Assembly: GCA_002269645.1 (NCBI GenBank) | Contig: NIVC01001960.1 | Location: forward strand, 124,001-188,000 | Length of the DNA stretch: 64,000 nucleotides | Source of the DNA: Macrostomum lignano | Taxonomy: Eukaryota | Reading direction: 5' to 3' | Shown here: piece after piece, positions 49,176 to 64,000 of the stretch | Position numbering within the stretch: position 1 is the stretch's first letter | Layout: the number at the start of each line of letters is the position of its first letter | The notes under the pieces: generated by a model | Database searches by the model: none | What the model saw: only the letters and a program-made list of their open reading frames with translations | What the model was told of the DNA's origin: nothing | Program-made: the position numbers and the translations under genes

Positions 49176-52100
49176 ATGCCAAACGAAGCCGCCATGGAGC
49201 CGCAGCAGCGACTTCGCCGCCTAATGAGCTCAGCTGAGAGTTTCGCAATTCAAAAAGAGATTGGCGTTGAGAAATATCTGAGATCGGGGGTTGAAATGAT
49301 GCGAATGGCTAGGATGTACTTGCGGACTAAGGAGCTGCAGAATGCCTACGTGCTGTTCTCCAAGTTCGCCATTATGGTGCTGGACAAACTTCCCAAGCAT
49401 CCTGGATTTGCTGCTGCACCGGAGCATTTGAAGAAAAATGCAAGGTATTGGCGACATGCGGGTTTTTCTCTGAAGTCCAATAATTTGGTTATTGATTGAT
49501 AAATCTCCCATTTCTTTAATGTTTTCCCAGTTTCCTAAAAGTACTATCTAGATTGACGGATTCTTATAAGGTTCTCTCAGGCTACCCAGTGTTCTCTCAG
49601 GCTACCCAGTGTTCTCTCAGGCTACCCAGTGTTCTCTCAGGCTACCCAATGTTCTCTCAGGCTCTCCAGTGTTCTCTCAGGCTCTCCAGTGTTCTCTCAG
49701 GCTACCCAATGTTCTCTCAGGCTCTCCCGTGTTCTCTCAGGCTACCCAGTGTTCTCTCAGGCTACCCAGTGTTCTCTCAGGCTACCTAGTGTTCTCTCAG
49801 GCTACCCAATGTTCTCTCAGGCTACCCAGTGTTCTCTCAGGCTACCCAATGTTCTCTCAGGCTCTCCAGTGTTCTCTCAGGCTCTCCAGTGTTCTCTCAG
49901 GCTACCCAATGTTCTCTCAGGCTCTCCCGTGTTCTCTCAGGCTACCCAGTGTTCTCTCAGGCTACCCAGTGTTCTCTCAGGCTACCTAGTGTTCTCTCAG
50001 GCTACCCAATGTTCTCTCAGGCTCTCCCGTGTTCTCTCAGGCTTTCCAGTGTTCTTTCAGGCTCTCCAGTGTTCTCTCAGGCTACCCAATGTTCTCTCAG
50101 GCTCTCCAGTGTTCTCTCAGGCTACCCAATGTTCTCTCAGGCTCTCCAGTGTTCTCTCAGGCTCTCCAGTGTTCTCTCAGGCTACCCAATGTTCTCTCAG
50201 GCTACCCAGTGTTCTCTCAGGCTACCCAATGTTCTCTCAGGCTACCCAGTGTTCTCTCAGGCTACCCAATGTTCTCTCAGGCTACCCAATGTTCTCTCAG
50301 GCTCTCCAGTGTTCTCTCAGGCTCTCCAGTGTTCTCTCAGGCTACCCAATGTTCTCTCAGGCTCTCCTGTGTTCTCTCAGGTTACCCAGTGTTCTCTCAG
50401 GCTACCCAGTGTTCTCTCAGGCTACCCAGTGTTCTCTCAGGCTACCCAGTGTTCTCTCATACTACCCAGTGTTCTCTCAGGCTACCCAATGTTCTCTCAG
50501 GCTACCCAATGTTCTCTCAGGCTCTCCAGTGTTCTCTCAGGCTCTCCAGTGTTCTCTCAGGCTACCCAATGTTCTCTCAGGCTCTCCTGTGTTCTCTCAG
50601 GCTACCCAGTGTTCTCTCAGGCTACCCAGTGTTCTCTCAGGCTCTCCAGTGTTCTCTCAGGCTACCCAATGTTCTCTCAGGCTCTCCCGTGTTCTCTCAG
50701 GCTACCCAGTGTTCTCTCAGGCTACCCAGTGTTCTCTCAGGCTACCCAGTGTTCTCTCAGGCTACCCAGTGTTCTCTCATACTACCCAGTGTTCTCTCAG
50801 GCTATCCAGTGTTCTCTCAGGCTACCCAGTGTTCTCTCAGGCTACCCAGTGTTCTCTCAGGCTACCCAGTGTTCTCTCAGACTACCCAGTGTTCTCTCAG
50901 GCTACCCAGTGTTCTCTCAGACTACCCAGTGTTCTCTCAGGCTATCCAGTGTTCTCTCAGGCTACCCAGTGTTCTCTCAGGCTACCCAGTGTTCTCGCAG
51001 GCTACCCAATGTTCTCTCAGACTACCCAGTGTTCTCTCAGACTACCCAGTGTTCTCTCAGGCTACCCTGTGTTCTCTCAGGCTACCCAGTGTTCTCTCAG
51101 ACTACCCAGTGTTCTCTCAGGCTACCCAATGTTCTCTCAGGCTACCCAGTGTTCTCTCAGACTACCCAGTGTTCTCTCAGGCTACCCAATGTTCTCTCAG
51201 GCTACCCAGTGTTCTCTCAGGCTACCCAGTGTTCTCTCAGGCTACCCAGTGTTCTCTCAGGCTATCCAGTGTTCTCTCAGGCTACCCAGTGTTCTCTCAG
51301 GCTACCCAATGTTCTCTCAGGCTACCCAGTGTTCTCTCAGGCTACCCAGTGTTCTCTCAGGCTACCCAATGTTCTCTCAGGCTACCCAGTGTTCTCTCAG
51401 GCTACCCAGTGTTCTCTCAGGCTACCCAATGTTCTCTCAGGCTCTCCCGTGTTCTCTCAGACTACCCAATGTTCTCTCAGGCTATCCAGTGTTCTCTCAG
51501 GCTCTCCAGTGTTCTCTCAGGCTACCCAATGTTCTCTCAGGCTACCCAATGTTCTCTCAGGCTATCCAATGTTCTCTCAGGCTCTCCAATGTTCTCTCAG
51601 ACTACCCAATGTTCTCTCAGGCTACCTAATGTTCTCTCAGACTACCCAGTGTTCTCTCAGGCTATCCAGTGTTCTCTCAGGCTACCCAATGTTCTCTCAG
51701 GCTACCCAATGTTCTCTCAGGCTCTCCAGTGTTCTCTCAGGCTCTCCAGTGTTCTCTCAGGCTACCCAATGTTCTCTCAGGCTCTCCCGTGTTCTCTCAG
51801 GCTACCCAATGTTCTCTCAGGCTACCCAATGTTCTCTCAGGCTACCCAATGTTCTCTCAGGCTACCCAATGTTCTCTCAGGCTCTCCAGTGTTCTCTCAG
51901 GCTCTCCAGTGTTCTCTTAGGCTACCCAATGTTCTCTCAGGCTCTCCCATGTTCTCTCAGGCTCTCCAGTGTTCTCTCAGGCTCTCCAGTGTTCTCTCAG
52001 GCTACACTGTGTTCTCTCAGGTTACCCAGTGTTCTCTCAGGTTACCCAGTGTTCTCTCAGGCTACCCAGTGTTCTCTCAGGCTACCCAATGTTCTCTCAG

Positions 52101-54479
52101 GCTACCCAGTGTTCTTTCAGGCTACCCTGTGTTCTCTCAGGCTACCCAATGTTCTCTCAGGCTACCCAGTGTTCTCTCAGGCTACCCAGTGTTCTCTCAG
52201 GCATTCCAGTGTTCTCTCAGGTTCTCCAGTGTTCTTTCAGACTACCCAATATTCTCTCAGGCTACCCAGTGTTCTCTCAGGCTACCCAGTGTTCTCTCAG
52301 GCTACCCAGTGTTCTCTCAGGCATTCCAGTGTTCTCTCAGGTTCTCCAGTGTTCTTTCAGACTACCCAATGTTCTCCCAGGCTATCCAGTGTTCTCTCAG
52401 GCTACCCAATGTTCTCTCAGGCTCCCCAGTGTTCTTTCAGGCTACCCAATGTTCTCTCAGGCATTCCAGTGTTCTCTCAGGTTCTCCAGTGTTCTCTCAG
52501 GCTACCCAATGTTCTCTCAGGCTACCCAGTGTTCTCTCAGGCTACCCAATGTTCTCTCAGGCATTCCAGTGTTCTCTCAGGTTCTCCAGTGTTCTTTCAG
52601 ACTACCCAATATTCTCTCAGGCTACCCAATATTCTCTCAGGCTACCCAATGTTCTCTCAGGCTCTTCAGTGTTCTCTCAGTCTACCCAGTGTTCTCTCAG
52701 GCTACCCAATGTTCTCTCAGGCTATCCAGTGTTCTCTCAGGCTACCCAATGTTCTCTCAGGCATTCCAGTGTTCTCTCAGGTTCTCCAGTGTTCTTTCAG
52801 ACTACCCAATATTCTCTCAGGCTACCCAATGTTCTCTCAGGCTATCCAGTGTTCTCTCAGGCTACCCAATGTTCTCTCAGGCTCCCCAGTGTTCTTTCAG
52901 GCTACCCAATGTTCTCTCAGGCTACCCAATGTTCTCTCAGGCTCTCCAGTGTTCTCTCAGGCTACCCAATGTTCTCTCAGGCTCCCCAGTGTTCTTTCAG
53001 GCTACCCAATGTTCTCTCAGGCTATCCAGTGTTCTCTCAGTCTACCCAATGTTCTCTCAGGCTATCCAGTGTTCTCTCAGGCTACCCAATGTTCTCTCAG
53101 GCTACCCAATATTCTCTCAGGCTACCCAATATTCTCTCAGGCTACCCAATGTTCTCTCAGGCTCCCCAGTGTTCTTTCAGGCTACCCAATGTTCTCTCAG
53201 GCCCTTCAATGCACGAGTGCTTAATTAGAGTATCCCGAGCACACTAATAACTGGATGGGCCACTCGGGCACACTGGCTTGCTAAAACTGTCTCTACTTTC
53301 AGCTCAGTAGCAAGGCAGAATGCATAAGCTATTCTATGAAAAGACAGGCAGTTGGAGTGACTAGCAGACGCCAACACAACTGGCTATTGGTGCAGCCGTA
53401 ATGTACATTTACCAGCCAGAGCCACTGAGAATGTACATGCCAGCTTTAGGCTGCCACTCTGATATGGGCAATAAAATTCAGCGGGGGGGGGCGGTGCTAA
53501 GAGGGCCAATAAATGAGTCTCGTCTTAAAATACGTTAAAATGCTTCTATTTGAACTGCCTACTGAACTGAAAGTAGCTTATGCGCAGATGTGCACTCAAG
53601 TCCTTTTACGAGTAGATGAAAAAATCTTGTTCAAAAAGAAGACAAAAACTTTGCTTCTTGCTCAGGCTCGAATGCAAAACCGCTCTAAGCGAGGCCGAGC
53701 GCATCAAGCGCCTCCTGTTAGACCAGTTCGCCGCCGAGCACGCCAAAGCCAAGGCCGAAGCCGAAGCTGCCGAGGCCGCCAGGGCGAATGCCGTTGCTGC
53801 CAAACAGGCCGAGGAGATCCTGCCGCCTGTTGAACCGAGCGCGCCGCCGCCGCCGTACAGCGGTGCCGATGCGTCCTCGTCGACCATAGCACCGCCCAGC
53901 CTGTCGGAGGACTTCGGCCTCTCTGACAGCAGCTGGGGCAGCCATTCGGGCGTTGGTTCGCTGCGCACTCTGGTGCTGCCGGCCCAGCTCGGGCTGAGAT
54001 TTCTCCGCCTGGCCGACAGCAACACCGCCGCTAATAAGGAGACCTGCGGCATTCTCTGCGGCTCAGTGAGAGACGGCGCCCTGGCCGTCACAGATTTGGT
54101 GCTGCCGAAGCAGAGCGGAACTTCGGACTCCTGCACCACCAGCGGCGAGGAGGAGATCTTCGGCGTGCTGGACAGGTTCGACCTGGTCACCCTCGGCTGG
54201 GTGCACACGCACCCTACTCAGACTGCTTTCCTATCTAGCATCGACCTGCACACTCACCTGTCCTATCAGCTCATGCTGCCCGAAGCTGTTGCCGTTGTGT
54301 GCGCGCCGAAATTCGGCGACACGGCTACGTTCACCCTGACCCAGCACGGCCTGGACTATCTCAGCCGCTGCTCTGGCAAGGGCTTCCACCCGCATCAGGA
54401 GCATCCGCCCCTGTTTGAGCGGGCCAAGCACGCCATTGATGCGCCCGAGGGCGATCTTAAGGTGCACGATTTGCGCTGA
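49176..54479 (+). CDS. STAMBP: AMSH/STAMBP family JAMM deubiquitinase; exons 49176-49444 and 53666-54479
   Basis: N-terminal domain KYLRSGVEMMRMA...AYVLFSKFAIMVLDKLPKHPGF; phase-2 junction KNAR|LECK; MPN/JAMM motifs ETCGILCG, PKQSGTSDSC and GWVHTHPTQTAFLSSIDLHTH...YQLMLPEAVAVVCAPK. Confidence 0.95.
49571..53200. repeat. 20-bp minisatellite (GTTCTCTCAGGCTACCCA(G/A)T), ~181 copies in unbroken register, in the STAMBP intron
   Basis: Register is constant on every 60-nt line; local 200-bp and 120-bp higher-order periods. Confidence 0.98.
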
Positions 54480-54679
54480 ATACATCTGGGCCTGCTCCGT
54501 TTGGATTGTGTTGCCTTCGGAATAGTTTGTTTCAACACATATCGGTGTTGTTGAAGCCTAACTCTGAATGGCTTAACCTGCTGAGTTCGATCAATTCTAA
54601 CGGATACTGATTTGCTAGCTATCCAGATGTACTCAAGCATTTTGGGCTAGAGACTCTTGTAGAGCCTTAATCTTAATCT

Positions 54680-55310
54680 CACCCAGTCACTCTCCCAGTC
54701 TCTCTCGGTCTCACCCAGTCACTCTCCCAATCTCTATCAGTCTCACCCAGTCACTCTCCCAGTCTCTCTGTCTCACCCAGTCACTCTCCCAATGTCTCTC
54801 AGACTCCCCCAGTCACTCTCTCTAATCTCTCTCAGTCTCACCCAGTCACTCTCCCAATCTCTCTCAGTCTCACCCAGTCACTCTCCCAATCTCTCTCAGA
54901 CTCCCCCAGTCACTCTCTCTAATCTCTCTCAGTCTCACCCAGTCACTCTCCCAATCTCTCTCAGTCTCACCCCTGTCACTCTCCCAATCTCTCTCAGACT
55001 CCCCAGTCACACTCTCTAATCTCTCTCAGTCTCACCCAGTCACTCTCCCAATCTCTATCAGTCTCACCCAGTCACTCTCCCAGTCTCTCTGTCTCACCCA
55101 GTCACTCTCCCAATGTCTCTCAGACTCCCCCAGTCACTCTCTCTAATCTCTCTCAGTCTTACCCAGTCACTCTCCCAATATTTCAGTCTCACCCAGTCAC
55201 TCTCCCAATCTCTCCCAGTCTCACCCAGTCACTCTCCCAATCTCTCTCAGTCTCACCCAGTCACTCTCCCAATCTCTCTCAGTCTCACCCAGCCACTCCC
55301 AATCTCTCAC
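54680..55310. repeat. Degenerate pyrimidine-rich ~30-bp array (TCTCACCCAGTCACTCTCCCAATCTCTCTCAG)
   Basis: Directly visible; a related array occurs at 61870-62105. Confidence 0.88.
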
Positions 55311-56134
55311 AGTGATTGATCACACCGATAGACTACTATTCTATTACTAATAGTAATATTGGGCGTAAATTTTTATTAATTACGCATTAAATCTAGCTTA
55401 AAATGAAAAAAGAAGTGTGATTTTGATTTCTATCTCTGCAAGCGGCAGTGTGTATCCAGTCTATTGTTCTGTCTTTTCTCTATGCAATATGATGCCGTCA
55501 GTGTTGCAGTAGCTCTGTGTTCAATGTACGATATTTTTATATCCCTATATTGATAGAAAAACTCCTATTCTGCGCCGAGCTGTTTCACAGTACATACTGC
55601 TCTGTTATTTGCCAAAACGGATGCTTCTCGTATACAGTGAGCGAAATGAGAAAGAGCTGACTGCTTCCTTTATAACCCCCAATTTTCATATTTGTTTACA
55701 TAATGCGATGCTTGCACAGTATTTTTGTTATGATATACTAAGCGTTTCGGCTTGACACTGCTTATAATTAATGCTATATTTTTATTATTCCTTGGCTGAA
55801 TTAAATTCGATAATACGACAACAAACGCTTATTGGAAATTTATTTGTGTAGCACAAATTTCTGCTTTTATTTATTTATTTATAGAGAATTCGATTTAGGG
55901 GAAACTTTCATTTTGGCATTATGAATTTGGATCCTTGTATGTCAAATGTCAAATCTGGTTCATATTTCATTTTTAGTGCTAATAGTTTTATATTTATTGG
56001 GGTTCTTGGTGTTTCTGGACCTCTATCGGTTGTCAGCTTTGAGCAATCTGTGAGCATGGAGTCTGCAAACTTCTGCAACCCTCTGTGGGTCAGAGAGGCT
56101 CTGTACTATGCTATAGAGTCAGGGGGCTGCAGGC

Positions 56135-56778
56135 ACACAACCGGCGAGAGGCATTACTGCCCATTCCGCCAACTCCCCTGAGCAGGCACACAAGCGGCGA
56201 GAGGCATTACTGCCCATTCCGCCAACTCCCCTGAGCAGGCACACAACCGGCGAGAGGCATTACTGCCCATTCCGCCAACTCCCCTGAGCAGGCACACAAC
56301 CGGCGAGAGGCATTACTGCCCATTCCGCCAACTCCCCTGAGCAGGCACACAACCGGCGAGAGGCATTACTGCCCATTCCGCCAACTCCCCTGAGCAGGCA
56401 CACAAGCGCGTGGATCATGGATGAAGCAATAGAAAGGCTCGCTCATCTGAAACCGGCGTACAAGCTTCAGCCAGTAAGAACTTGGGGGGGGGGGAGGGTA
56501 CTATTATTAAATTCCAGCAGCCAATGAAATTCATGGGGGGAATATCCCAATTTTTAGGAAGTCTTGGCCGTAGACTCGCTTTCAGATGAGCGATCCTTTC
56601 TATTCCTTCATCCATGGCGCGGATACGTACGCAGTCATACGCACAGGCACACGCTCACAGTTAGGCATGCACACTTCACTGAGCCTTGTGGGGTTGGCCC
56701 TCAAGGCCGTTAATTGCACGAGCAGAGATTCCAATTTGGCTCCAAATTAATGTGACTGCACTTGGAATCGAGCCTGGA
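56135..56778 (+). mobile_element. Dispersed repeat family A, copy 3, with five tandem 53-bp units and a nested MITE
   Basis: GGCACACAACCGGCGAGAGGCATTACTGCCCATTCCGCCAACTCCCCTGAGCA x5, then family-A sequence interrupted at 56416-56616. Confidence 0.8.
56416..56616. mobile_element. 201-bp hAT-like MITE
   Basis: 37-bp TIRs with 2 mismatches (CATGGATGAAG(C/G)AATAGAAAGG(C/A)TCGCTCATCTGAAA); 8-bp TSD GCGTGGAT/GCGCGGAT; the empty site is seen in family-A copies 1 and 2. Confidence 0.88.
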
Positions 56779-56998
56779 GAACGCAGTGCTGGATGCTCAG
56801 CAATGTAAAGGGTAGGGATTGAACTTTTTGGTTAATGCCAGCTGGCATCCTGGTTTTCAATTTGGCATCTTGAATTTGCGTGGGAGTGTCACTTCCATGT
56901 CTCCCGCTCCGTGTTCCCTGATCTGAATATCTATGGAGCTTAGACCTGTTGTTTTACCTCAGTAATTAATATTAATAATTTGTCCGGCCATCCCGCAG

Positions 56999-59900
56999 CC
57001 TCAGCAAGACGCTCAACAGACCCCGGCGCTGGCTGACGAGTTGGCCAGTCTGCACCAGCAGCTGCGCCAGGAGCGCCTCTTTGTCTGCTGCGAGAAGGAT
57101 CTCATCAGGCAGCTGTTTGATCAGCTGAGCGACGCCTCTCGTAGAATACTGCACGAAGGCTTCCGTTTGCACCTGCAGCAGCGACTGCTCACCCGCGAAG
57201 CTGCCACAGCCTCGGCCGCTACAGGCTGCGTGGATTTGGCTCGCTTCGCCGCCGCTTTGGACGCCGAGCTGCGCTATCGCGATGCCTACTCTCTGCTCAC
57301 CTGTCACGAGCACAAGTACGCCGACCTGCTCAGGCTGCTGCGAACCAGCCCGGACCTGCTGGCTCACGTGCTGCTCACTGTTGAGCGGCGGCCTCTCGCT
57401 GACACCGACTGCACCAACGACCCGCCCGGCAGCGGCGGCTGCCTGCCCAGACTGCTGCAGTGCGTCTTCGCCTGCCTGTTCGGCCACTGCCTGGCCGAAT
57501 CGTCCGAGGAGGCCTGCTATCAGACTCTGATGCGCCTGATGGAGATTCAGGTTGGTGCTCAGTTAGCGAGAACTCACTGGCCCTTCCTGTTAAGTCAGTG
57601 ATTTATTGATGGATATTTATTACTCTGTTGTAGCCTAGTGGTTAGAGCAACGGACTCACGACTTGAAGGTCGGGGGTTCGATTCCCGATCCCACTGGAAC
57701 AGTTTGTGTCCTCGATCAAGACACTTAACTCTACACTGCTTCAGTTCACCCAGCTGTAAAATGGGTGCCAGCATTAGCTGGGGTAATTGAGGCTGTGTGT
57801 AGCGACCCCCCCCCCCCAGTCCTTGGACTGAACAGCCGTACGCAGCCTTCAGATGCGCCGCGCAAATAGCAGCTGAGCTGTCGGTTGCACACCTGGCCCA
57901 ATTAGGGCAGGTGTGAATCAATTATTATTATTATTATTATATTAAAATCCTGGGATTTATGGTTATTTATCTAATAGTCAAATGTAAGGGACATAAAGTG
58001 ACTCAAAAATCTGCCAACCCCTGTCTCATACTCAGGTCCTGCCGCTGGACAATCCCGTCAAGCTGTTGTCTCGCGGCACGGCCACTTTTGTCCGACTGCT
58101 CCGCCTCAGCCTGGACGCCGGCGCTGGCGGCTTCCTGGTGCAGACCCTACGCCGGCCGATTCACACCCTGCTGGCGGAGTTCAACGATGTCTTCTTGGAT
58201 CTGGATCTCAACAAGGCTGTGCAGGTAACTGCCGGTATATGCCTTGTCGCTTGCCTGTGGCTTCTACTGGCTATTATTGCCAGTTGTCTCTACCCTGTCA
58301 TTCTACTGTCTACCCTGTCATTCTACTGTCTACCCTGTCTACCCTACTGTCTACCCTACCGTCTACCCCTACCATTCAACCCTGTTGCAGGACCGGTTCT
58401 GCCGGGACCGACGCGAGCACATGTTTGGGAAGGAGGGCAGCGAGCAGTTTGAGCTGTGCGTGCGCGACTACCGCAAGCAGATGGCCGATAGGTAAAATTT
58501 GCGACTTAACCTAAGCTGCAAACTGACTGCGGCCGGCAAACCCGCACGAGCTCTGGTTTCCATATTTCAGAGTGGCCCGCCTGGCCCGCCTGTTCATAGA
58601 CGAGCTCCGCGAGAACACGCGCGCCTTTCCACGACCGTTCCTCTGGTTGCTGAGCGGCCTCTACCGGCAGGCCAGCGGCCGGCCCAACAGTCGAATGTCG
58701 CCTGCGGCAGCGCGCTCCCTCTGCGGCCACCTGGTGTTTCAGCACTACCTGATCCCGGCCCTGCTCGACCCCGAGCACAGCGGCATAGTTTGCAGCGTGG
58801 CTATCAACTACATCCAGCGGAACAACCTCATGCAGATGGGCCAGGTACTCGAGGCATTGTGCCAGGGCGGCTCGCTGGACTCGCGCGTATTCAGCCCGGA
58901 GATATTCGGCCAGTTCGAGCCGGACTGTCTGACTGGCTGGCTGGACTCGCTGCTGCGGATCGGCGCCGGGCTCAGCGGGCCAGTTGCCGGCCTGCAGCCG
59001 CAGCAGCAGCACCAGCAGCTCCAGCTGAGCAGCCTGGCTGTCACGCCGGACGATCTGGACCTGCTTGTCCGGGCCTGCCGCGTTGCCGTCGGCTCCGGCC
59101 AGCAGGACGACGGAGCGGGGGCGGCTGCCGCAGCCAGTGCGGCCGCATCGCAGCAGCGACGCAGACTGGAGGCCTGTCTGGCCGACCTGCCCGAGTCCGT
59201 GCCGGGTCGCTCCGCTGCCAACGCCACCGGCTCTTTCTCGACGGGAGCAGCCGCATCGCCAGCTCACAATGTCGGCTCGGCCTCTTCAACGCCGAGGGCC
59301 GAGGCGGCGCTGTCGCACTCGCCAGCGTCCAGCTCGTCGCCTTTTGTGCATCGCCGCCGGCAGGTGACGTCATTGCTCGGCAACTTTGGCAGCGGAGGCG
59401 GCGGCATCGGAGCCCACTCGCCTCTGACTGGCTCTACGGAGTCGCTGTGCGCTCCGGACTCCGGGCAGGAGATGGTAGGGCTTGATGTACTTCCATAGCT
59501 CATGTATAGTGCTATGCTTCAAACTAAGAAAAAATAAGTACAAACGGATTCTGTGTTCTCTTTATAGACGGGACATTGTGAACTTTATCGTGGTCTTATT
59601 GATAAAGCTTAGGTACCTAAGGTTCCGTTAGGTTTGTCTAAACTTTGAAGAATAGGATATTCTACTATTAGTAAACATTTAACATTTCCTCATTCCTCAT
59701 TAACAGATCCGGCAGTCCCGCGACGTCCTGGTGCTCCAGCTGGACCCGCCGGCCGACTGTCCCGGCCTGCTGCCCGAGGACCGGGTGCTGGAGAAGGCCA
59801 GCAAGCGAGCCAGGGTGTCAATCTTCGCGCCGGAGGAGTCTTCCTACACTAGGGGCGGCGGCGGCGGTGGCAGCGGCGGCAGCGGCGGCAACGAGAAGAA

Positions 59901-61804
59901 GACCCGGTTTTCACTTAGCGGACTCGGCGGCGGCGACTCCGAAGCCGGCGGCTCAACATCTGGCAGTCATCAAGGCGGAGGCGCCGGTGGCGGCGGCGGC
60001 GGTGGGGGTGGCGGCAGCGGCGGAGACTGTCTGGAGATTGTCAGCGAGACCGCCATCTCGGAGGTGGCCTCCACGCACAGCGCGCCGTCAGTGGAGATGG
60101 ACGAGGAGGACGAGAGTCTGGTCTCCGCCAACGTCAGCGGCCGCGGTACGCCCAGCATCAGCGGCCGAGACAGTCCGCTAGACGCCCTGCCAGACGGCAG
60201 CAGCGGCAAAGACGTCACCGAGCGATTCAACAAGTTCGACATTCCGCCCCCGCAGCGGGACATGTCGCCAGTTGAACGCCCCGACGATCAATGGTCTACG
60301 TCGGTGATTGACAGCGAAGGCGACAGGGACGCCACGGCGCGCGACCTGATGCTGGACACCGACGACAAGTTCTCGATTGAAGTGCCAGCTAGCGAGGCCG
60401 ACGACAAATATTCGGAGCGGCTTGGCGAGGATTTCGACGAGACGGCCAGCAACTGCAGCAGCAGCGTGTCGGCCGCCAAGGTTGGCGCAGCCGCGGCGGC
60501 CGCAGCCAACGCAGCCGCGGCAGCCGCCAATCGGCGCCGATCGCAAGACGACCACGCCGGCCCAGTCGAAGCCGCAGCTGCCGGCATCGGGGCCAGCGAC
60601 ACCGGCAGCGAGCCGGGCGGAGGCACCGGCGGCGCGATCGGCAGCGGCGGTGGCCGACCATCCCGGCCGGCCGGTCCGGCTGGCAAGCTGAAGAAGCCGC
60701 TAGCCAAGAAGACGCTGCTGAACGCGGCCGCCAAGTCTGGCGGCATCGTCGGAGGCGGTGGTGGCTCCAGCGGCGCCGTTGAATCAGAATCGGCGGCGTC
60801 CCCAGCGGTGACTGCCTCGCCGGCTGCAGCGACTCCACTGTCGGCCGCTGACCTGGTGTTCACAAAATACAAAACTGCCCGAAGGCCGCCGGCCGGGCCA
60901 GCCACGGCCTCTGCCGCCGCGGCCAACAACTCAACCGGGTCGCCGGCGCCCGCTGCCGCCGCTGACGCCGAAGACGCCGCCGACGGTGCGACCGGCGCCG
61001 AGTCCTCCCAGGCGGAGGACGGGACAGCCGCGCCGCCGTTTTTCGATCCTAGCAATCCGGAGGACAGCCCGGCCTTCGCCGAGGCCAAGCGGCGGCTGCG
61101 CTCCGCCCTCACCAGCTCGGAGTTCCGCCTGCTGCCGCCCGGCGGCTTCGACTCCGGCTCGGCTAGCGGCGGTGTCGCCGACCTGTTGAGGCGCCAACTG
61201 GCCGAGGCGGCCGAACTGGGCCTGGACCAGCTGGCTGCCGCCCTGGCCGACCTGTTGGCCGTGCTGGCCCGTTCGACGCGCACGCCTTGAAGCGGCTGCT
61301 GCTGTCGATGCGGCGCGACCTGAAGCAGCGGGCCGTGTACGCCGCCTACCTGGTGAACACGCGCACGCCCTGGCCGCCAGGCGGGACCGAGCCGAGCACG
61401 CGCTTCGCCGCCTGCGACACTCCCGCCGCCTGGCCTTTCAACAGTTGCTGCTGTGCGAGCTGCGCGCCTTCTTAAAGCGCTCGGACGAGCACGAGGTGCG
61501 CAGCCTGCAGGCCACGCTGCGTCAGTGCAATTCTGCTGACGAGAAATGCGAAGAGACCCAGAAACTCGTGGCTCACCTGTGCGCCAGGCTCAACTGGAGC
61601 CGGTCTGCCGGCCTAGGATTCGATCAGCAGGACTCGTCAGTGGCGGCCGCGGCCAACTCCGAGGAGGACTCGCCAGCTGGCGACCTGCTGCAGCAGTCCT
61701 ACGATTATATTGAGCGCTGGCTAGTGAGCTACCCGGAGGTCTATGCCTACCTGAGCGGCTCTAACGACATGCGCGTCATGCAGGAGCGGGACGAGGTGTT
61801 CCGG
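56999..61804 (+). CDS. GAPVD1: GAPVD1/Gapex-5/RME-6 orthologue, 3'-partial; exons ~56999-57550, 58036-58224, 58391-58491, 58571-59474, 59707-61804; no in-frame ATG at the 5' end; two apparent -1 frameshifts near 61270 and 61363; VPS9 exons expected beyond the window
   Basis: LHQQLRQERLFVCCEKDLI (N-terminus), DNPVKLLSRGTATF, MFGKEGSEQF, FPRPFLWL, IPALLDPEHSGIV...INYIQRNNLMQMGQVL (RasGAP-like), EVASTHS, SANVSGRGTPSISGRDSP, FAEAKRRLRSAL, KQRAVYAAYLV; GT-AG junctions in consistent phase. Confidence 0.9.
57626..57940 (+). mobile_element. tRNA-derived SINE in GAPVD1 intron 1
   Basis: A-box TAGCCTAGTGG (57631-57641), B-box GGTTCGATTCC (57675-57685), central CACCCAGCTGTAAAATGGG segment reminiscent of conserved SINE core domains, and an (ATT)n tail. 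Confidence 0.85.
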
Positions 61805-61869
61805 GTGAGAGTTGGCTCCATGCTGGCCGCTTTGATGCCTGCTGCCACTGCACCTCTTGGCACTTCTCA

Positions 61870-63525
<1,656 letters not shown>

Positions 63526-63569
63526 ATTAAATTAATTAAGTCTTTGATTTTTTTAAACACGCCGTGACC

Positions 63570-63744
<175 letters not shown>

Positions 63745-64000
63745 AGCCTTTTGTTGCTCCTTTCTTAGAAATTTTTTTATTCTCATCGCTAGCCCAAGCA
63801 CAGCTTTTGTATATTCTCAGCATTTATTCTGCATCAACATTTCTATTGTTTCTTGACACCCTGTACTTTTTATTACACTTTTTACTTTTACTCTTTTGCT
63901 TATCGTACAATTGCTCTTTTTTTAAGTTTTTGAGGGCCTTTCACCTTATTTATTTATTTATTGATTTACTGCTTATTTATTTATTGAGGTCAATTTTGTA

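What the first reader, a model, noticed from the sequence alone, without database searches (positions are those of the whole stretch)
56960..57070. GAPVD1 has no initiator ATG; a spliced-leader AUG would start it in frame
Seen: in the coding frame there is a TAA at 56963-56965 and no ATG before the conserved N-terminal block LHQQLRQERLFV. The acceptor CCATCCCGCAG ends at 56998, and the next base starts an in-frame codon (CCT CAG CAA GAC...); alternative CAGs ending at 57004 and 57019 are also in frame. Known: flatworm spliced leaders end in AUG, which can serve as the initiator Met, and in the orthologues the homologous block lies within about ten residues of the N-terminus. Inference: translation is obligatorily dependent on trans-splicing (MPQQDAQQTPALADELASL...).
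Basis: partly seen in the sequence, partly recalled or inferred. Interest (0 to 1): 0.72.

Follow-up and report, generated by a model that had tools for sequence, protein, structure and literature searches.

The report
Flatworm gene borrowing spliced-leader start codon
A Macrostomum lignano GAPVD1 gene has no start codon of its own and most likely takes its AUG from the trans-spliced leader RNA, a mechanism already shown in schistosomes, so this is a further example and not a new principle.

Summary
In the GAPVD1 reading frame a TAA sits at 56963-56965. No in-frame ATG follows it before the conserved block LHQQLRQERLFV (57050-57085). A CAG acceptor ends at 56998, and the next base opens an in-frame codon.

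The window is Macrostomum lignano, assembly Mlig_3_7, contig NIVC01001960.1. The deposited RNA-seq-based annotation (PAA62231.1, "partial") starts its Met-less CDS exactly at 56999. A second copy of the gene starts at the same base and a third starts 3 nt downstream. All three copies carry the same TAA.

The published M. lignano spliced leader is 35 nt, ends in ATG and is followed by a GTAAG donor. Joined at 56998|56999 it reads ...GCATG|CCTCAGCAA, giving M-PQQDAQQ... in frame. That places the conserved Glu at residue 26. In 71 Met-started orthologues it lies at residue 9-38, median 21.

I found no SL-containing read or transcript for this site, so trans-splicing here and initiation at the SL AUG remain inferred.

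The mechanism is established for Schistosoma mansoni (Cheng et al. 2006). I rate this a new member of a known kind, of modest interest. The window copy also has two 1-nt deletions and an enlarged last intron.

The parts
56933..56965 (+). Short in-frame ORF in the presumed outron (ATG GAG CTT AGA CCT GTT GTT TTA CCT CAG TAA).
   Evidence: Translation. Identical in all three genomic copies except one G>C change in codon 2 of L003.
56978..56998 (+). Pyrimidine-rich tract and CAG acceptor (AG at 56997-56998): the proposed SL trans-splice acceptor.
   Evidence: Sequence. The annotated CDS of PAA62231.1 begins at 56999. The ParaSite models P0001 and P0002 splice into the same site. GC content steps from 0.38 to 0.65 here.
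56999..57550 (+). GAPVD1 exon 1 (184 codons, phase 0, no ATG until near its end). With the SL attached it reads AUG|CCU CAG CAA..., giving MPQQDAQQTPALADELASL...
   Evidence: 100% identical to residues 1-184 of PAA62231.1.
57002..57019 (+). Alternative in-frame CAG acceptors ending at 57004 and 57019. The out-of-frame AAG ending at 57008 lies between them.
   Evidence: The annotated CDS of copy L002 starts at the position equivalent to 57002.
57050..57085 (+). Conserved N-terminal block LHQQLRQERLFV.
   Evidence: Aligned to L..HLKQERLFV in orthologues.
58036..58224 (+). Exon 2.
   Evidence: Canonical splice sites and continuous reading frame. Matches PAA62231.1.
58391..58491 (+). Exon 3.
58571..59474 (+). 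Exon 4, carrying the RasGAP domain.
   Evidence: Pfam PF00616, E = 6.3e-08.
59707..61805 (+). Exon 5. In this copy two 1-nt deletions (about 61271 in a C run, about 61364 in GG) create a premature TGA at 61288-61290. The donor is at 61806. The final VPS9 exon lies outside the window, at about window-equivalent position 70053.
54459..54479 (+). End of the upstream same-strand STAMBP/AMSH-like gene (stop at 54477-54479). It contains the AAG|GTGCAC donor (54462) that the ParaSite models use to fuse STAMBP to GAPVD1.

Best explanation
The window holds one of three near-identical copies of the Macrostomum lignano GAPVD1 (RME-6) gene. Its first coding exon begins at a 3' splice acceptor (AG at 56997-56998) and contains no initiator ATG. 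The pre-mRNA is SL trans-spliced at this acceptor. The 35-nt spliced leader ends in AUG, and joined to 56999 it gives ...UUGCAUG|CCUCAGCAA..., which puts that AUG in frame. Translation therefore starts at the SL-donated AUG and yields MPQQDAQQTPALADELASLHQQLRQERLFV.... Shown here: the missing genomic ATG, the in-frame stop, the phase-0 acceptor, identity of these features in three copies, and the annotated Met-less CDS boundary at the acceptor. Taken from the literature: the SL sequence ending in ATG, the way transcript 5' ends were defined in this annotation, and the use of the flatworm SL AUG as initiator in Schistosoma mansoni. Inferred: that SL reads map to this particular site, and that ribosomes initiate at the SL AUG.
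For: No in-frame ATG lies between the TAA at 56963 and the conserved block. The acceptor is in phase 0. PAA62231.1 (BOX15_Mlig011836g2, 'partial') starts with P at 56999; PAA56151.1 starts at the same base and PAA64431.1 starts 3 nt later. The Mlig_3_7 annotation cut transcripts at mapped SL sites and then ran TransDecoder (PMC5730564). A 5'-partial ORF that starts right after an AG, with an in-frame stop 33 nt upstream, means the annotated transcript begins there. The neighbouring STAMBP CDS is also 5'-partial and starts 2 nt after an AG in all three copies, which is the same signature of SL-defined ends. The SL is CGGTCTCTTACTGCGAAGACTCAATTTATTGCATG followed by GTAAG, and 30% of genes are trans-spliced (PMC8629364). 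The three copies are 99% identical upstream and all read CAGTAATT. With an SL-Met the conserved Glu sits at residue 26, within the range 9-38 seen in 71 orthologues. [quoted passage not shown] 2006, as summarised in PMC9851317). All reported parasitic-flatworm SLs end in ATG (PMC12582326).
Against: I recovered no SL-containing read, EST or transcript for this site. Searches of paper supplements for GAPVD1 found nothing, and a protein search seeded with the SL-encoded peptide found nothing. The acceptor CCGCAG does not match the enriched trans-acceptor motif [T/C]TNCAG, although only 44% of sites contain that motif. The SL AUG has T at position -3, a weak Kozak-type context. The L002 annotation starts 3 nt off the AG boundary. 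Two older gene models join this acceptor in frame to a donor inside the upstream STAMBP exon. The three copies are too similar to give evolutionary evidence.
Confidence: 0.75

Rival explanations
1. A very small cis-spliced 5' exon supplies the start. The ATG at 56933 (MELRP or MELRPV) would be joined to 56999 by removing a 51-nt or 48-nt intron (donor CCT|GTTGTT at 56948 or GTT|GTTTTA at 56951, acceptor at 56998). That excises the TAA and keeps the frame.
For: Both mini-introns are multiples of 3 and begin with GT. The ATG is kept in all three copies. This gene's own intron 1 uses a non-consensus GTTGGT donor. The resulting N-terminus, with the conserved Glu at about residue 31, is still within the orthologue range.
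Against: The donors do not match the M. lignano consensus GT[G/A]AG. The better-looking donor CA|GTAATT at 56962 gives a 37-nt intron that breaks the frame, and all three copies read CAGTAATT, so a lost G is not the explanation. The RNA-seq-based annotation starts a Met-less partial CDS at 56999 in two copies and does not call a complete CDS from 56933. The three copies are 99% identical everywhere, so retention of the ATG carries no weight.
Confidence: 0.07
2. The start lies in a distant upstream cis exon. One version splices from the donor AAG|GTGCAC at 54462, inside the last STAMBP exon, to give a STAMBP-GAPVD1 fusion protein as in UniProt A0A1I8JQ11 and A0A1I8IYU6. The other version uses some other ATG-containing exon in the 2.5-kb intergenic region.
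For: Two ParaSite models join ...APEGDLK directly to PQQDAQQ... in frame. Sharing of acceptors between cis- and trans-splicing is reported for parasitic flatworms (PMC12582326). Enumeration finds 47 in-frame ATG...GT candidates, a few with GTRAG donors: 56417-56473 CCA|GTAAGA and 55921-56049 TCT|GTGAGC.
Against: The evidence-based GenBank annotation keeps STAMBP (355 aa, with its own stop) and GAPVD1 as separate genes in all three copies. None of the candidate exons resembles anything in orthologues, whose conserved block starts at about residue 11, so no extra N-terminal exon is expected. The best-scoring candidates lie inside repeats: one overlaps an arm of a 40-nt inverted repeat, and tandem repeats are nearby. 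Fusion models are what a gene predictor would produce when a downstream gene lacks a start codon. The in-frame join has a 1/3 chance.
Confidence: 0.08
3. Translation starts at a non-AUG codon (for example CTG or TTG within 57029-57052) or at the distant internal Met, on an mRNA that may or may not be trans-spliced.
For: Several in-frame CTG and TTG codons precede the conserved block; the ORF listing reports a TTG-started ORF from 57041. Near-cognate initiation exists in eukaryotes (discussed in PMC9851317).
Against: If the SL is added, a 5'-proximal in-frame AUG is available. Starting at the internal Met would delete about 175 conserved residues. No evidence specifically favours a near-cognate site.
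Confidence: 0.05
4. The missing ATG is an artefact of a degraded or mis-assembled copy: this locus is a pseudogene or carries assembly errors.
For: The window copy has two 1-nt deletions in homopolymer runs inside conserved coding sequence, and a last intron of about 8.2 kb against about 0.8 kb in the other copies.
Against: The two copies with an intact 1,424-1,425-aa ORF have the same 5' region: the same TAA, the same acceptor, and no ATG.
Confidence: 0.03

Closest known systems
[quoted passage not shown]
   Same: The SL ends in AUG. The acceptor is in phase with a conserved ORF that has no AUG of its own. The SL therefore supplies the start codon.
   Different: This case is in a free-living macrostomorph, not a parasitic trematode. 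Here the mechanism is inferred from genome sequence and annotation and has not been shown by cDNA or translation assays. The M. lignano SL papers I read describe the SL and its ATG but do not analyse SL-AUG-dependent ORFs.
slORFs: open reading frames created by SL addition (slORFfinder, PMC9851317)
   Same: The start codon is supplied by the trans-spliced leader, so annotation on the genome alone misses the true ORF start.
   Different: That work covered nematodes, Oikopleura and trypanosomes, mostly with near-cognate NUG codons, and often found novel or alternative ORFs. Here a canonical AUG would start the main conserved ORF.
GAPVD1 / RME-6 (Rab5 GEF with an N-terminal RasGAP-like domain and a C-terminal VPS9 domain)
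   Same: Same domain order, conserved N-terminal block and 32% identity to the best metazoan orthologues.
   Different: The 71 Met-started orthologues analysed begin with their own Met 9-38 residues before the conserved Glu. Every M. lignano model examined lacks a Met start.
Downstream genes of SL-resolved operons in M. lignano (Ustyantsev and Berezikov 2021)
   Same: A same-strand upstream gene (STAMBP) is conserved in all three copies. Both genes have annotated 5' ends at AG acceptors.
   Different: The raw spacing is 2,519 nt, about 1.6 kb after subtracting the two tandem arrays. That exceeds the published 1-kb repeat-adjusted cut-off unless more of the spacer is repeat.

Membership tests
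SL-AUG-initiated flatworm mRNA (Cheng et al. 2006 class) | The organism has an SL RNA whose exon ends in AUG directly before the GU donor. | tested here: met
   The organism is identified as M. lignano. The published SL is ...TTGCATG followed by GTAAG (PMC8629364). No SL gene lies in the window.
SL-AUG-initiated flatworm mRNA (Cheng et al. 2006 class) | The mRNA is SL trans-spliced at an acceptor at the 5' edge of the ORF. | tested here: inconclusive
   The annotated 5'-partial CDS starts exactly at AG|56999 in two copies and 3 nt downstream in the third. The annotation method used SL-read peaks. No SL read or cDNA for this site could be retrieved.
SL-AUG-initiated flatworm mRNA (Cheng et al. 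2006 class) | The SL AUG is in frame with the conserved ORF with no intervening stop. | tested here: met
   56999 is phase 0 and the frame stays open to the end of exon 1.
SL-AUG-initiated flatworm mRNA (Cheng et al. 2006 class) | No genomic in-frame AUG lies between the acceptor and the conserved N-terminal region. | tested here: met
   The same holds in the other two copies.
SL-AUG-initiated flatworm mRNA (Cheng et al. 2006 class) | Translation actually initiates at the SL AUG. | not testable with these tools
   This needs ribosome profiling, N-terminal proteomics or reporter assays.
GAPVD1 / RME-6 | N-terminal RasGAP-like domain. | tested here: met
   PF00616, E = 6.3e-08; RasGAP is recorded for all three annotated products.
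GAPVD1 / RME-6 | C-terminal VPS9 domain. | tested here: met
   PF02204 is recorded for the two full-length copies. The VPS9 exon of this copy is at L001:23055 onward, outside the window and cut off from the ORF by the two frameshifts.
GAPVD1 / RME-6 | The best hits from other species are named GAPVD1 orthologues. | tested here: met
   Hits at E = 1e-46 to 1e-30, named GAPVD1 or RME-6 in Batillaria, Trichinella, Ciona and Soboliphyme.
Operon downstream gene (M. lignano definition) | A same-strand upstream gene less than 1 kb away after subtracting repeats, with the downstream gene SL trans-spliced. | tested here: inconclusive
   The spacing is 2,519 nt (54480-56998). Tandem arrays of 637 and 277 nt leave about 1.6 kb. 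Other repeats were not masked.

The most novel reading that the evidence does not exclude
GAPVD1, a conserved endocytic Rab5 regulator, has lost its own start codon in Macrostomum lignano, and every genomic copy depends on the AUG donated by the spliced leader. That would make trans-splicing indispensable for producing the protein, and not merely a form of 5' UTR processing. It would also place SL-AUG initiation in an early-branching free-living flatworm lineage, implying that the mechanism predates the parasitic Neodermata in which it was demonstrated. The neighbouring STAMBP gene may show the opposite situation: an out-of-frame SL AUG 8 nt upstream of the gene's own ATG.
Probability: 0.7. 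Interest if true: 0.35.

Novelty: new member of a known kind. Interest (0 to 1): 0.3.

Why it matters
If confirmed, this is a clear case, present in all three genomic copies, of a conserved housekeeping gene in a free-living model flatworm whose ORF is completed only by trans-splicing. It extends the schistosome precedent to Macrostomorpha.

It also has practical consequences. Public M. lignano proteins for this gene are either 'partial' and Met-less (GenBank) or falsely fused to the upstream STAMBP gene (UniProt/ParaSite). SL-aware ORF calling would correct both. Transgene or knock-in designs for such genes need to include the SL acceptor or add an ATG.

It does not reveal a new mechanism.

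Tried and rejected
1. Assembly-error rescue. I suspected a lost G that would create CAG|GTAATT and a 37-nt intron. All three copies read CAGTAATT, so I rejected this.

2. Upstream ATG exons. Enumerating them gave 47 chance candidates, none with homology.

3. SL RNA gene or other known RNA in the window. There was no SL match with up to 3 mismatches and no Rfam hit at gathering thresholds.

4. Direct transcript evidence.
- The search for homologous proteins with exon 1 alone found nothing.
- The same tool with the SL-encoded peptide fused to the N-terminus found nothing. In both searches it also missed P0001 and P0002, which are known relatives, so these negatives are uninformative.
- Supplements of three M. 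lignano papers hold no GAPVD1 or STAMBP entry.
- The Wasik 2015 paper is not held.

5. DNA for the ParaSite models P0001 and P0002 is not on record.

I did not pursue it by other means.

7. The tRNA-like stretch in intron 1 is not called as a tRNA by ARAGORN.
Full report
**Observation**

The sequence at 56900-57553, translated in the coding frame, reads ...*ISMELRPVVLPQ*LILIICPAIPQPQQDAQQTPALADELASLHQQLRQERLFVCCEKDLIRQL....
- The stop is TAA at 56963-56965.
- No in-frame ATG lies between it and the conserved block LHQQLRQERLFV (57050-57085). The next in-frame Met is about 175 codons downstream.
- The acceptor tttgtccggccatcccgCAG ends at 56998, and 56999 begins CCT CAG CAA GAC.
- Further CAGs end at 57004 and 57019 and are also in phase 0. 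The AAG ending at 57008 is not.
- GC content steps from 0.38 in the 60 nt before the acceptor to 0.65 in the 60 nt after it.

**What the locus is**

I built a five-exon model from canonical splice sites: 56999-57550, 58036-58224, 58391-58491, 58571-59474 and 59707 onward.
- Exon 4 matches Pfam RasGAP.
- An exhaustive HMMER search of the first four exons returned a 1,109-aa protein, 100% identical, aligned 1-409 to 1-409. That protein itself begins PQQDAQQ, with no Met.
- It is GenBank PAA62231.1, 'hypothetical protein BOX15_Mlig011836g2, partial [Macrostomum lignano]'.
- It is encoded on NIVC01001960.1 of assembly GCA_002269645.1 (Mlig_3_7). The annotated gene range corresponds exactly to window 56999-61290 (offset checked).
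- Other-species hits (E = 1e-46 and weaker, about 30% identity) are GAPVD1 or RME-6 proteins.
- The upstream same-strand gene (window 49191-54479, 355 aa, USP8_dimer plus JAB) is STAMBP/AMSH-like.

**Three copies**

The same 90% cluster holds two further GenBank proteins from other contigs.
- PAA56151.1 (1,424 aa) starts PQQDAQQ.
- PAA64431.1 (1,425 aa) starts QQDAQQ.
- Both are 'partial', and both have RasGAP plus VPS9.

I fetched their loci (L003, L002) and aligned 400 nt upstream and 100 nt downstream of the acceptor. The three copies are 99% identical. All carry the ATG at 56933, the TAA, the string CAGTAATT and the CAG acceptor.

This removes one explanation I had considered. A lost G in the assembly would have hidden a CAG|GTAATT donor and a 37-nt intron. 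The idea was worth testing because the window copy does contain two 1-nt deletions in homopolymer runs inside conserved coding sequence (about 61271 and 61364).

In L003 the annotated CDS starts at the base after the AG, as in the window. In L002 it starts 3 nt later.

**Why the annotation boundary matters**

The Mlig_3_7 annotation was made in three steps (PMC5730564):
- transcriptional units were assembled;
- they were cut at positions where SL-trimmed reads pile up (the TBONE pipeline);
- TransDecoder was then run.

An in-frame stop lies 33 nt upstream of 56999. A 5'-partial ORF can start at 56999 only if the annotated transcript starts there. If the transcript reached further upstream, or included an upstream exon, the CDS would either extend or be forced to start at an ATG.

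The neighbouring STAMBP CDS shows the same signature in all three copies. It is 5'-partial (AMEPQQ...) and begins 2 nt after an AG (49187-49188). That is the first full codon of a transcript starting right after that AG, even though an in-frame ATG lies 15 nt further upstream in the genome. Ends placed by chance would follow an AG about 1 time in 16.

This is good indirect evidence that 56998|56999 is an experimentally defined SL site. I did not see the reads themselves.

**The spliced leader**

The published M. lignano SL is the 35-nt CGGTCTCTTACTGCGAAGACTCAATTTATTGCATG.
- It is followed in the 109-nt SL RNA gene by a GTAAG donor.
- About 30% of genes are trans-spliced.
- The enriched trans-acceptor motif is [T/C]TNCAG, present at 44% of sites (PMC8629364).

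Joining the SL to 56999 gives ...GCATG|CCTCAGCAA, with the ATG in frame. The acceptor here (CCGCAG) does not match the enriched motif, and the SL AUG has T at position -3. These are minor points against.

**Fit to orthologues**

In 71 orthologues that start with Met and align well to the block, the conserved Glu of QE(R)LF lies at residue 9-38, median 21. With an SL-Met it would be residue 26 here. No sizeable N-terminal exon is therefore missing.

**Rivals**

(a) A tiny cis exon from the ATG at 56933.
- Introns of 51 or 48 nt would keep the frame.
- Their donors (GTTGTT, GTTTTA) are far from the GT[G/A]AG consensus.
- The evidence-based annotation does not use them.

(b) A cis splice from the upstream gene.
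- Two WormBase ParaSite/UniProt models (A0A1I8JQ11, A0A1I8IYU6) join ...APEGDLK of STAMBP, five codons before its stop (donor AAG|GTGCAC at 54462), directly to PQQDAQQ.
- This confirms that other pipelines chose the same acceptor.
- The fusion is more likely a predictor's way round a gene without a start codon. GenBank keeps the genes separate in all three copies.

(c) Other upstream ATG exons.
- There are 47 in-frame candidates by enumeration. None has homology.
- Of the candidates with the best donors, one overlaps an arm of the 40-nt inverted repeat, and tandem repeats lie nearby.

(d) Non-AUG initiation cannot be excluded, but nothing specific favours it.

(e) Pseudogene or artefact is excluded for the 5' end by the two intact copies.

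**Comparison with what is known**

Use of the flatworm SL 3'-terminal AUG as initiator Met was established in Schistosoma mansoni (Cheng et al. 2006).
- The 2025 survey of parasitic flatworms notes that all reported SLs end in ATG and can provide a start codon (PMC12582326).
- The M. lignano SL study I read does not analyse SL-AUG-dependent ORFs.

This locus is therefore a new, well-defined member of a known class in a lineage where individual examples have not been described. It is not a new mechanism.

**What remains unshown**

Two things remain unshown: SL reads or cDNA at this junction, and initiation at the SL AUG. My attempts to find transcript-level evidence failed or were uninformative.

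**Verdict**

- Novelty: new member of a known kind.
- Interest: about 0.3.

Noticed in passing
window 61265-61370 (about 61271 and about 61364): The window copy of GAPVD1 has two 1-nt deletions relative to the other two genomic copies. One is in a C run and one in GG, both inside conserved coding sequence. They create a premature TGA at 61288-61290, and the GenBank protein (1,109 aa) is truncated there. This could be a long-read assembly error or a decaying paralogue.
   Followed up: partly
window 61806-64000 and L001:14808-23054: The last intron of this copy is about 8.2 kb, against about 0.8 kb in copies L002 and L003, so the VPS9 exon lies outside the window (L001:23055). The extra DNA includes microsatellites and an ORF (61857-63110) with a GIY-YIG-like motif that suggests a Penelope-like element.
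   Followed up: partly
window 49186-49200: The annotated STAMBP CDS is also 5'-partial (AMEPQQ...) and starts 2 nt after an AG (49187-49188) in all three copies. If the SL is added there, its AUG lies 8 nt upstream of the gene's own ATG (49194) and out of frame with it, opening a 12-codon overlapping uORF. This is the opposite situation to GAPVD1.
   Followed up: partly
window 54459-54462 joined to 56999 (UniProt A0A1I8JQ11, A0A1I8IYU6): Public ParaSite/UniProt models named 'MPN domain-containing protein' are in-frame STAMBP-GAPVD1 fusions that use a donor five codons before the STAMBP stop. They are probably annotation artefacts caused by the missing start codon.
   Followed up: partly
window 49629-53250: The STAMBP intron holds a tandem array of about 3.6 kb. 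It reads as open 'ORFs' of up to 1,131 codons in several frames, with a repeating peptide unit of about 20 aa (VFSQATQCSLRLPSVLSGYP). This is a trap for ORF finders.
   Followed up: no
window 54677-55313 and 56129-56405: Two tandem arrays lie in the STAMBP-GAPVD1 spacer: a 32-nt unit x 20 copies (88% matches) and a 53-nt unit x 5.2 copies (99% matches).
   Followed up: partly
window 56416-56455 and 56577-56616: A 40-nt inverted repeat (93% complementary, arms 121 nt apart) lies immediately downstream of the 53-nt array. It looks like a MITE or a hairpin element.
   Followed up: no
window 57630-57700: A tRNA-like stretch (gtagcctagtggttagagcaacggactc...ggttcgattccc) lies in GAPVD1 intron 1. ARAGORN does not call it as a tRNA, so it is probably a tRNA-derived SINE.
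   Followed up: partly
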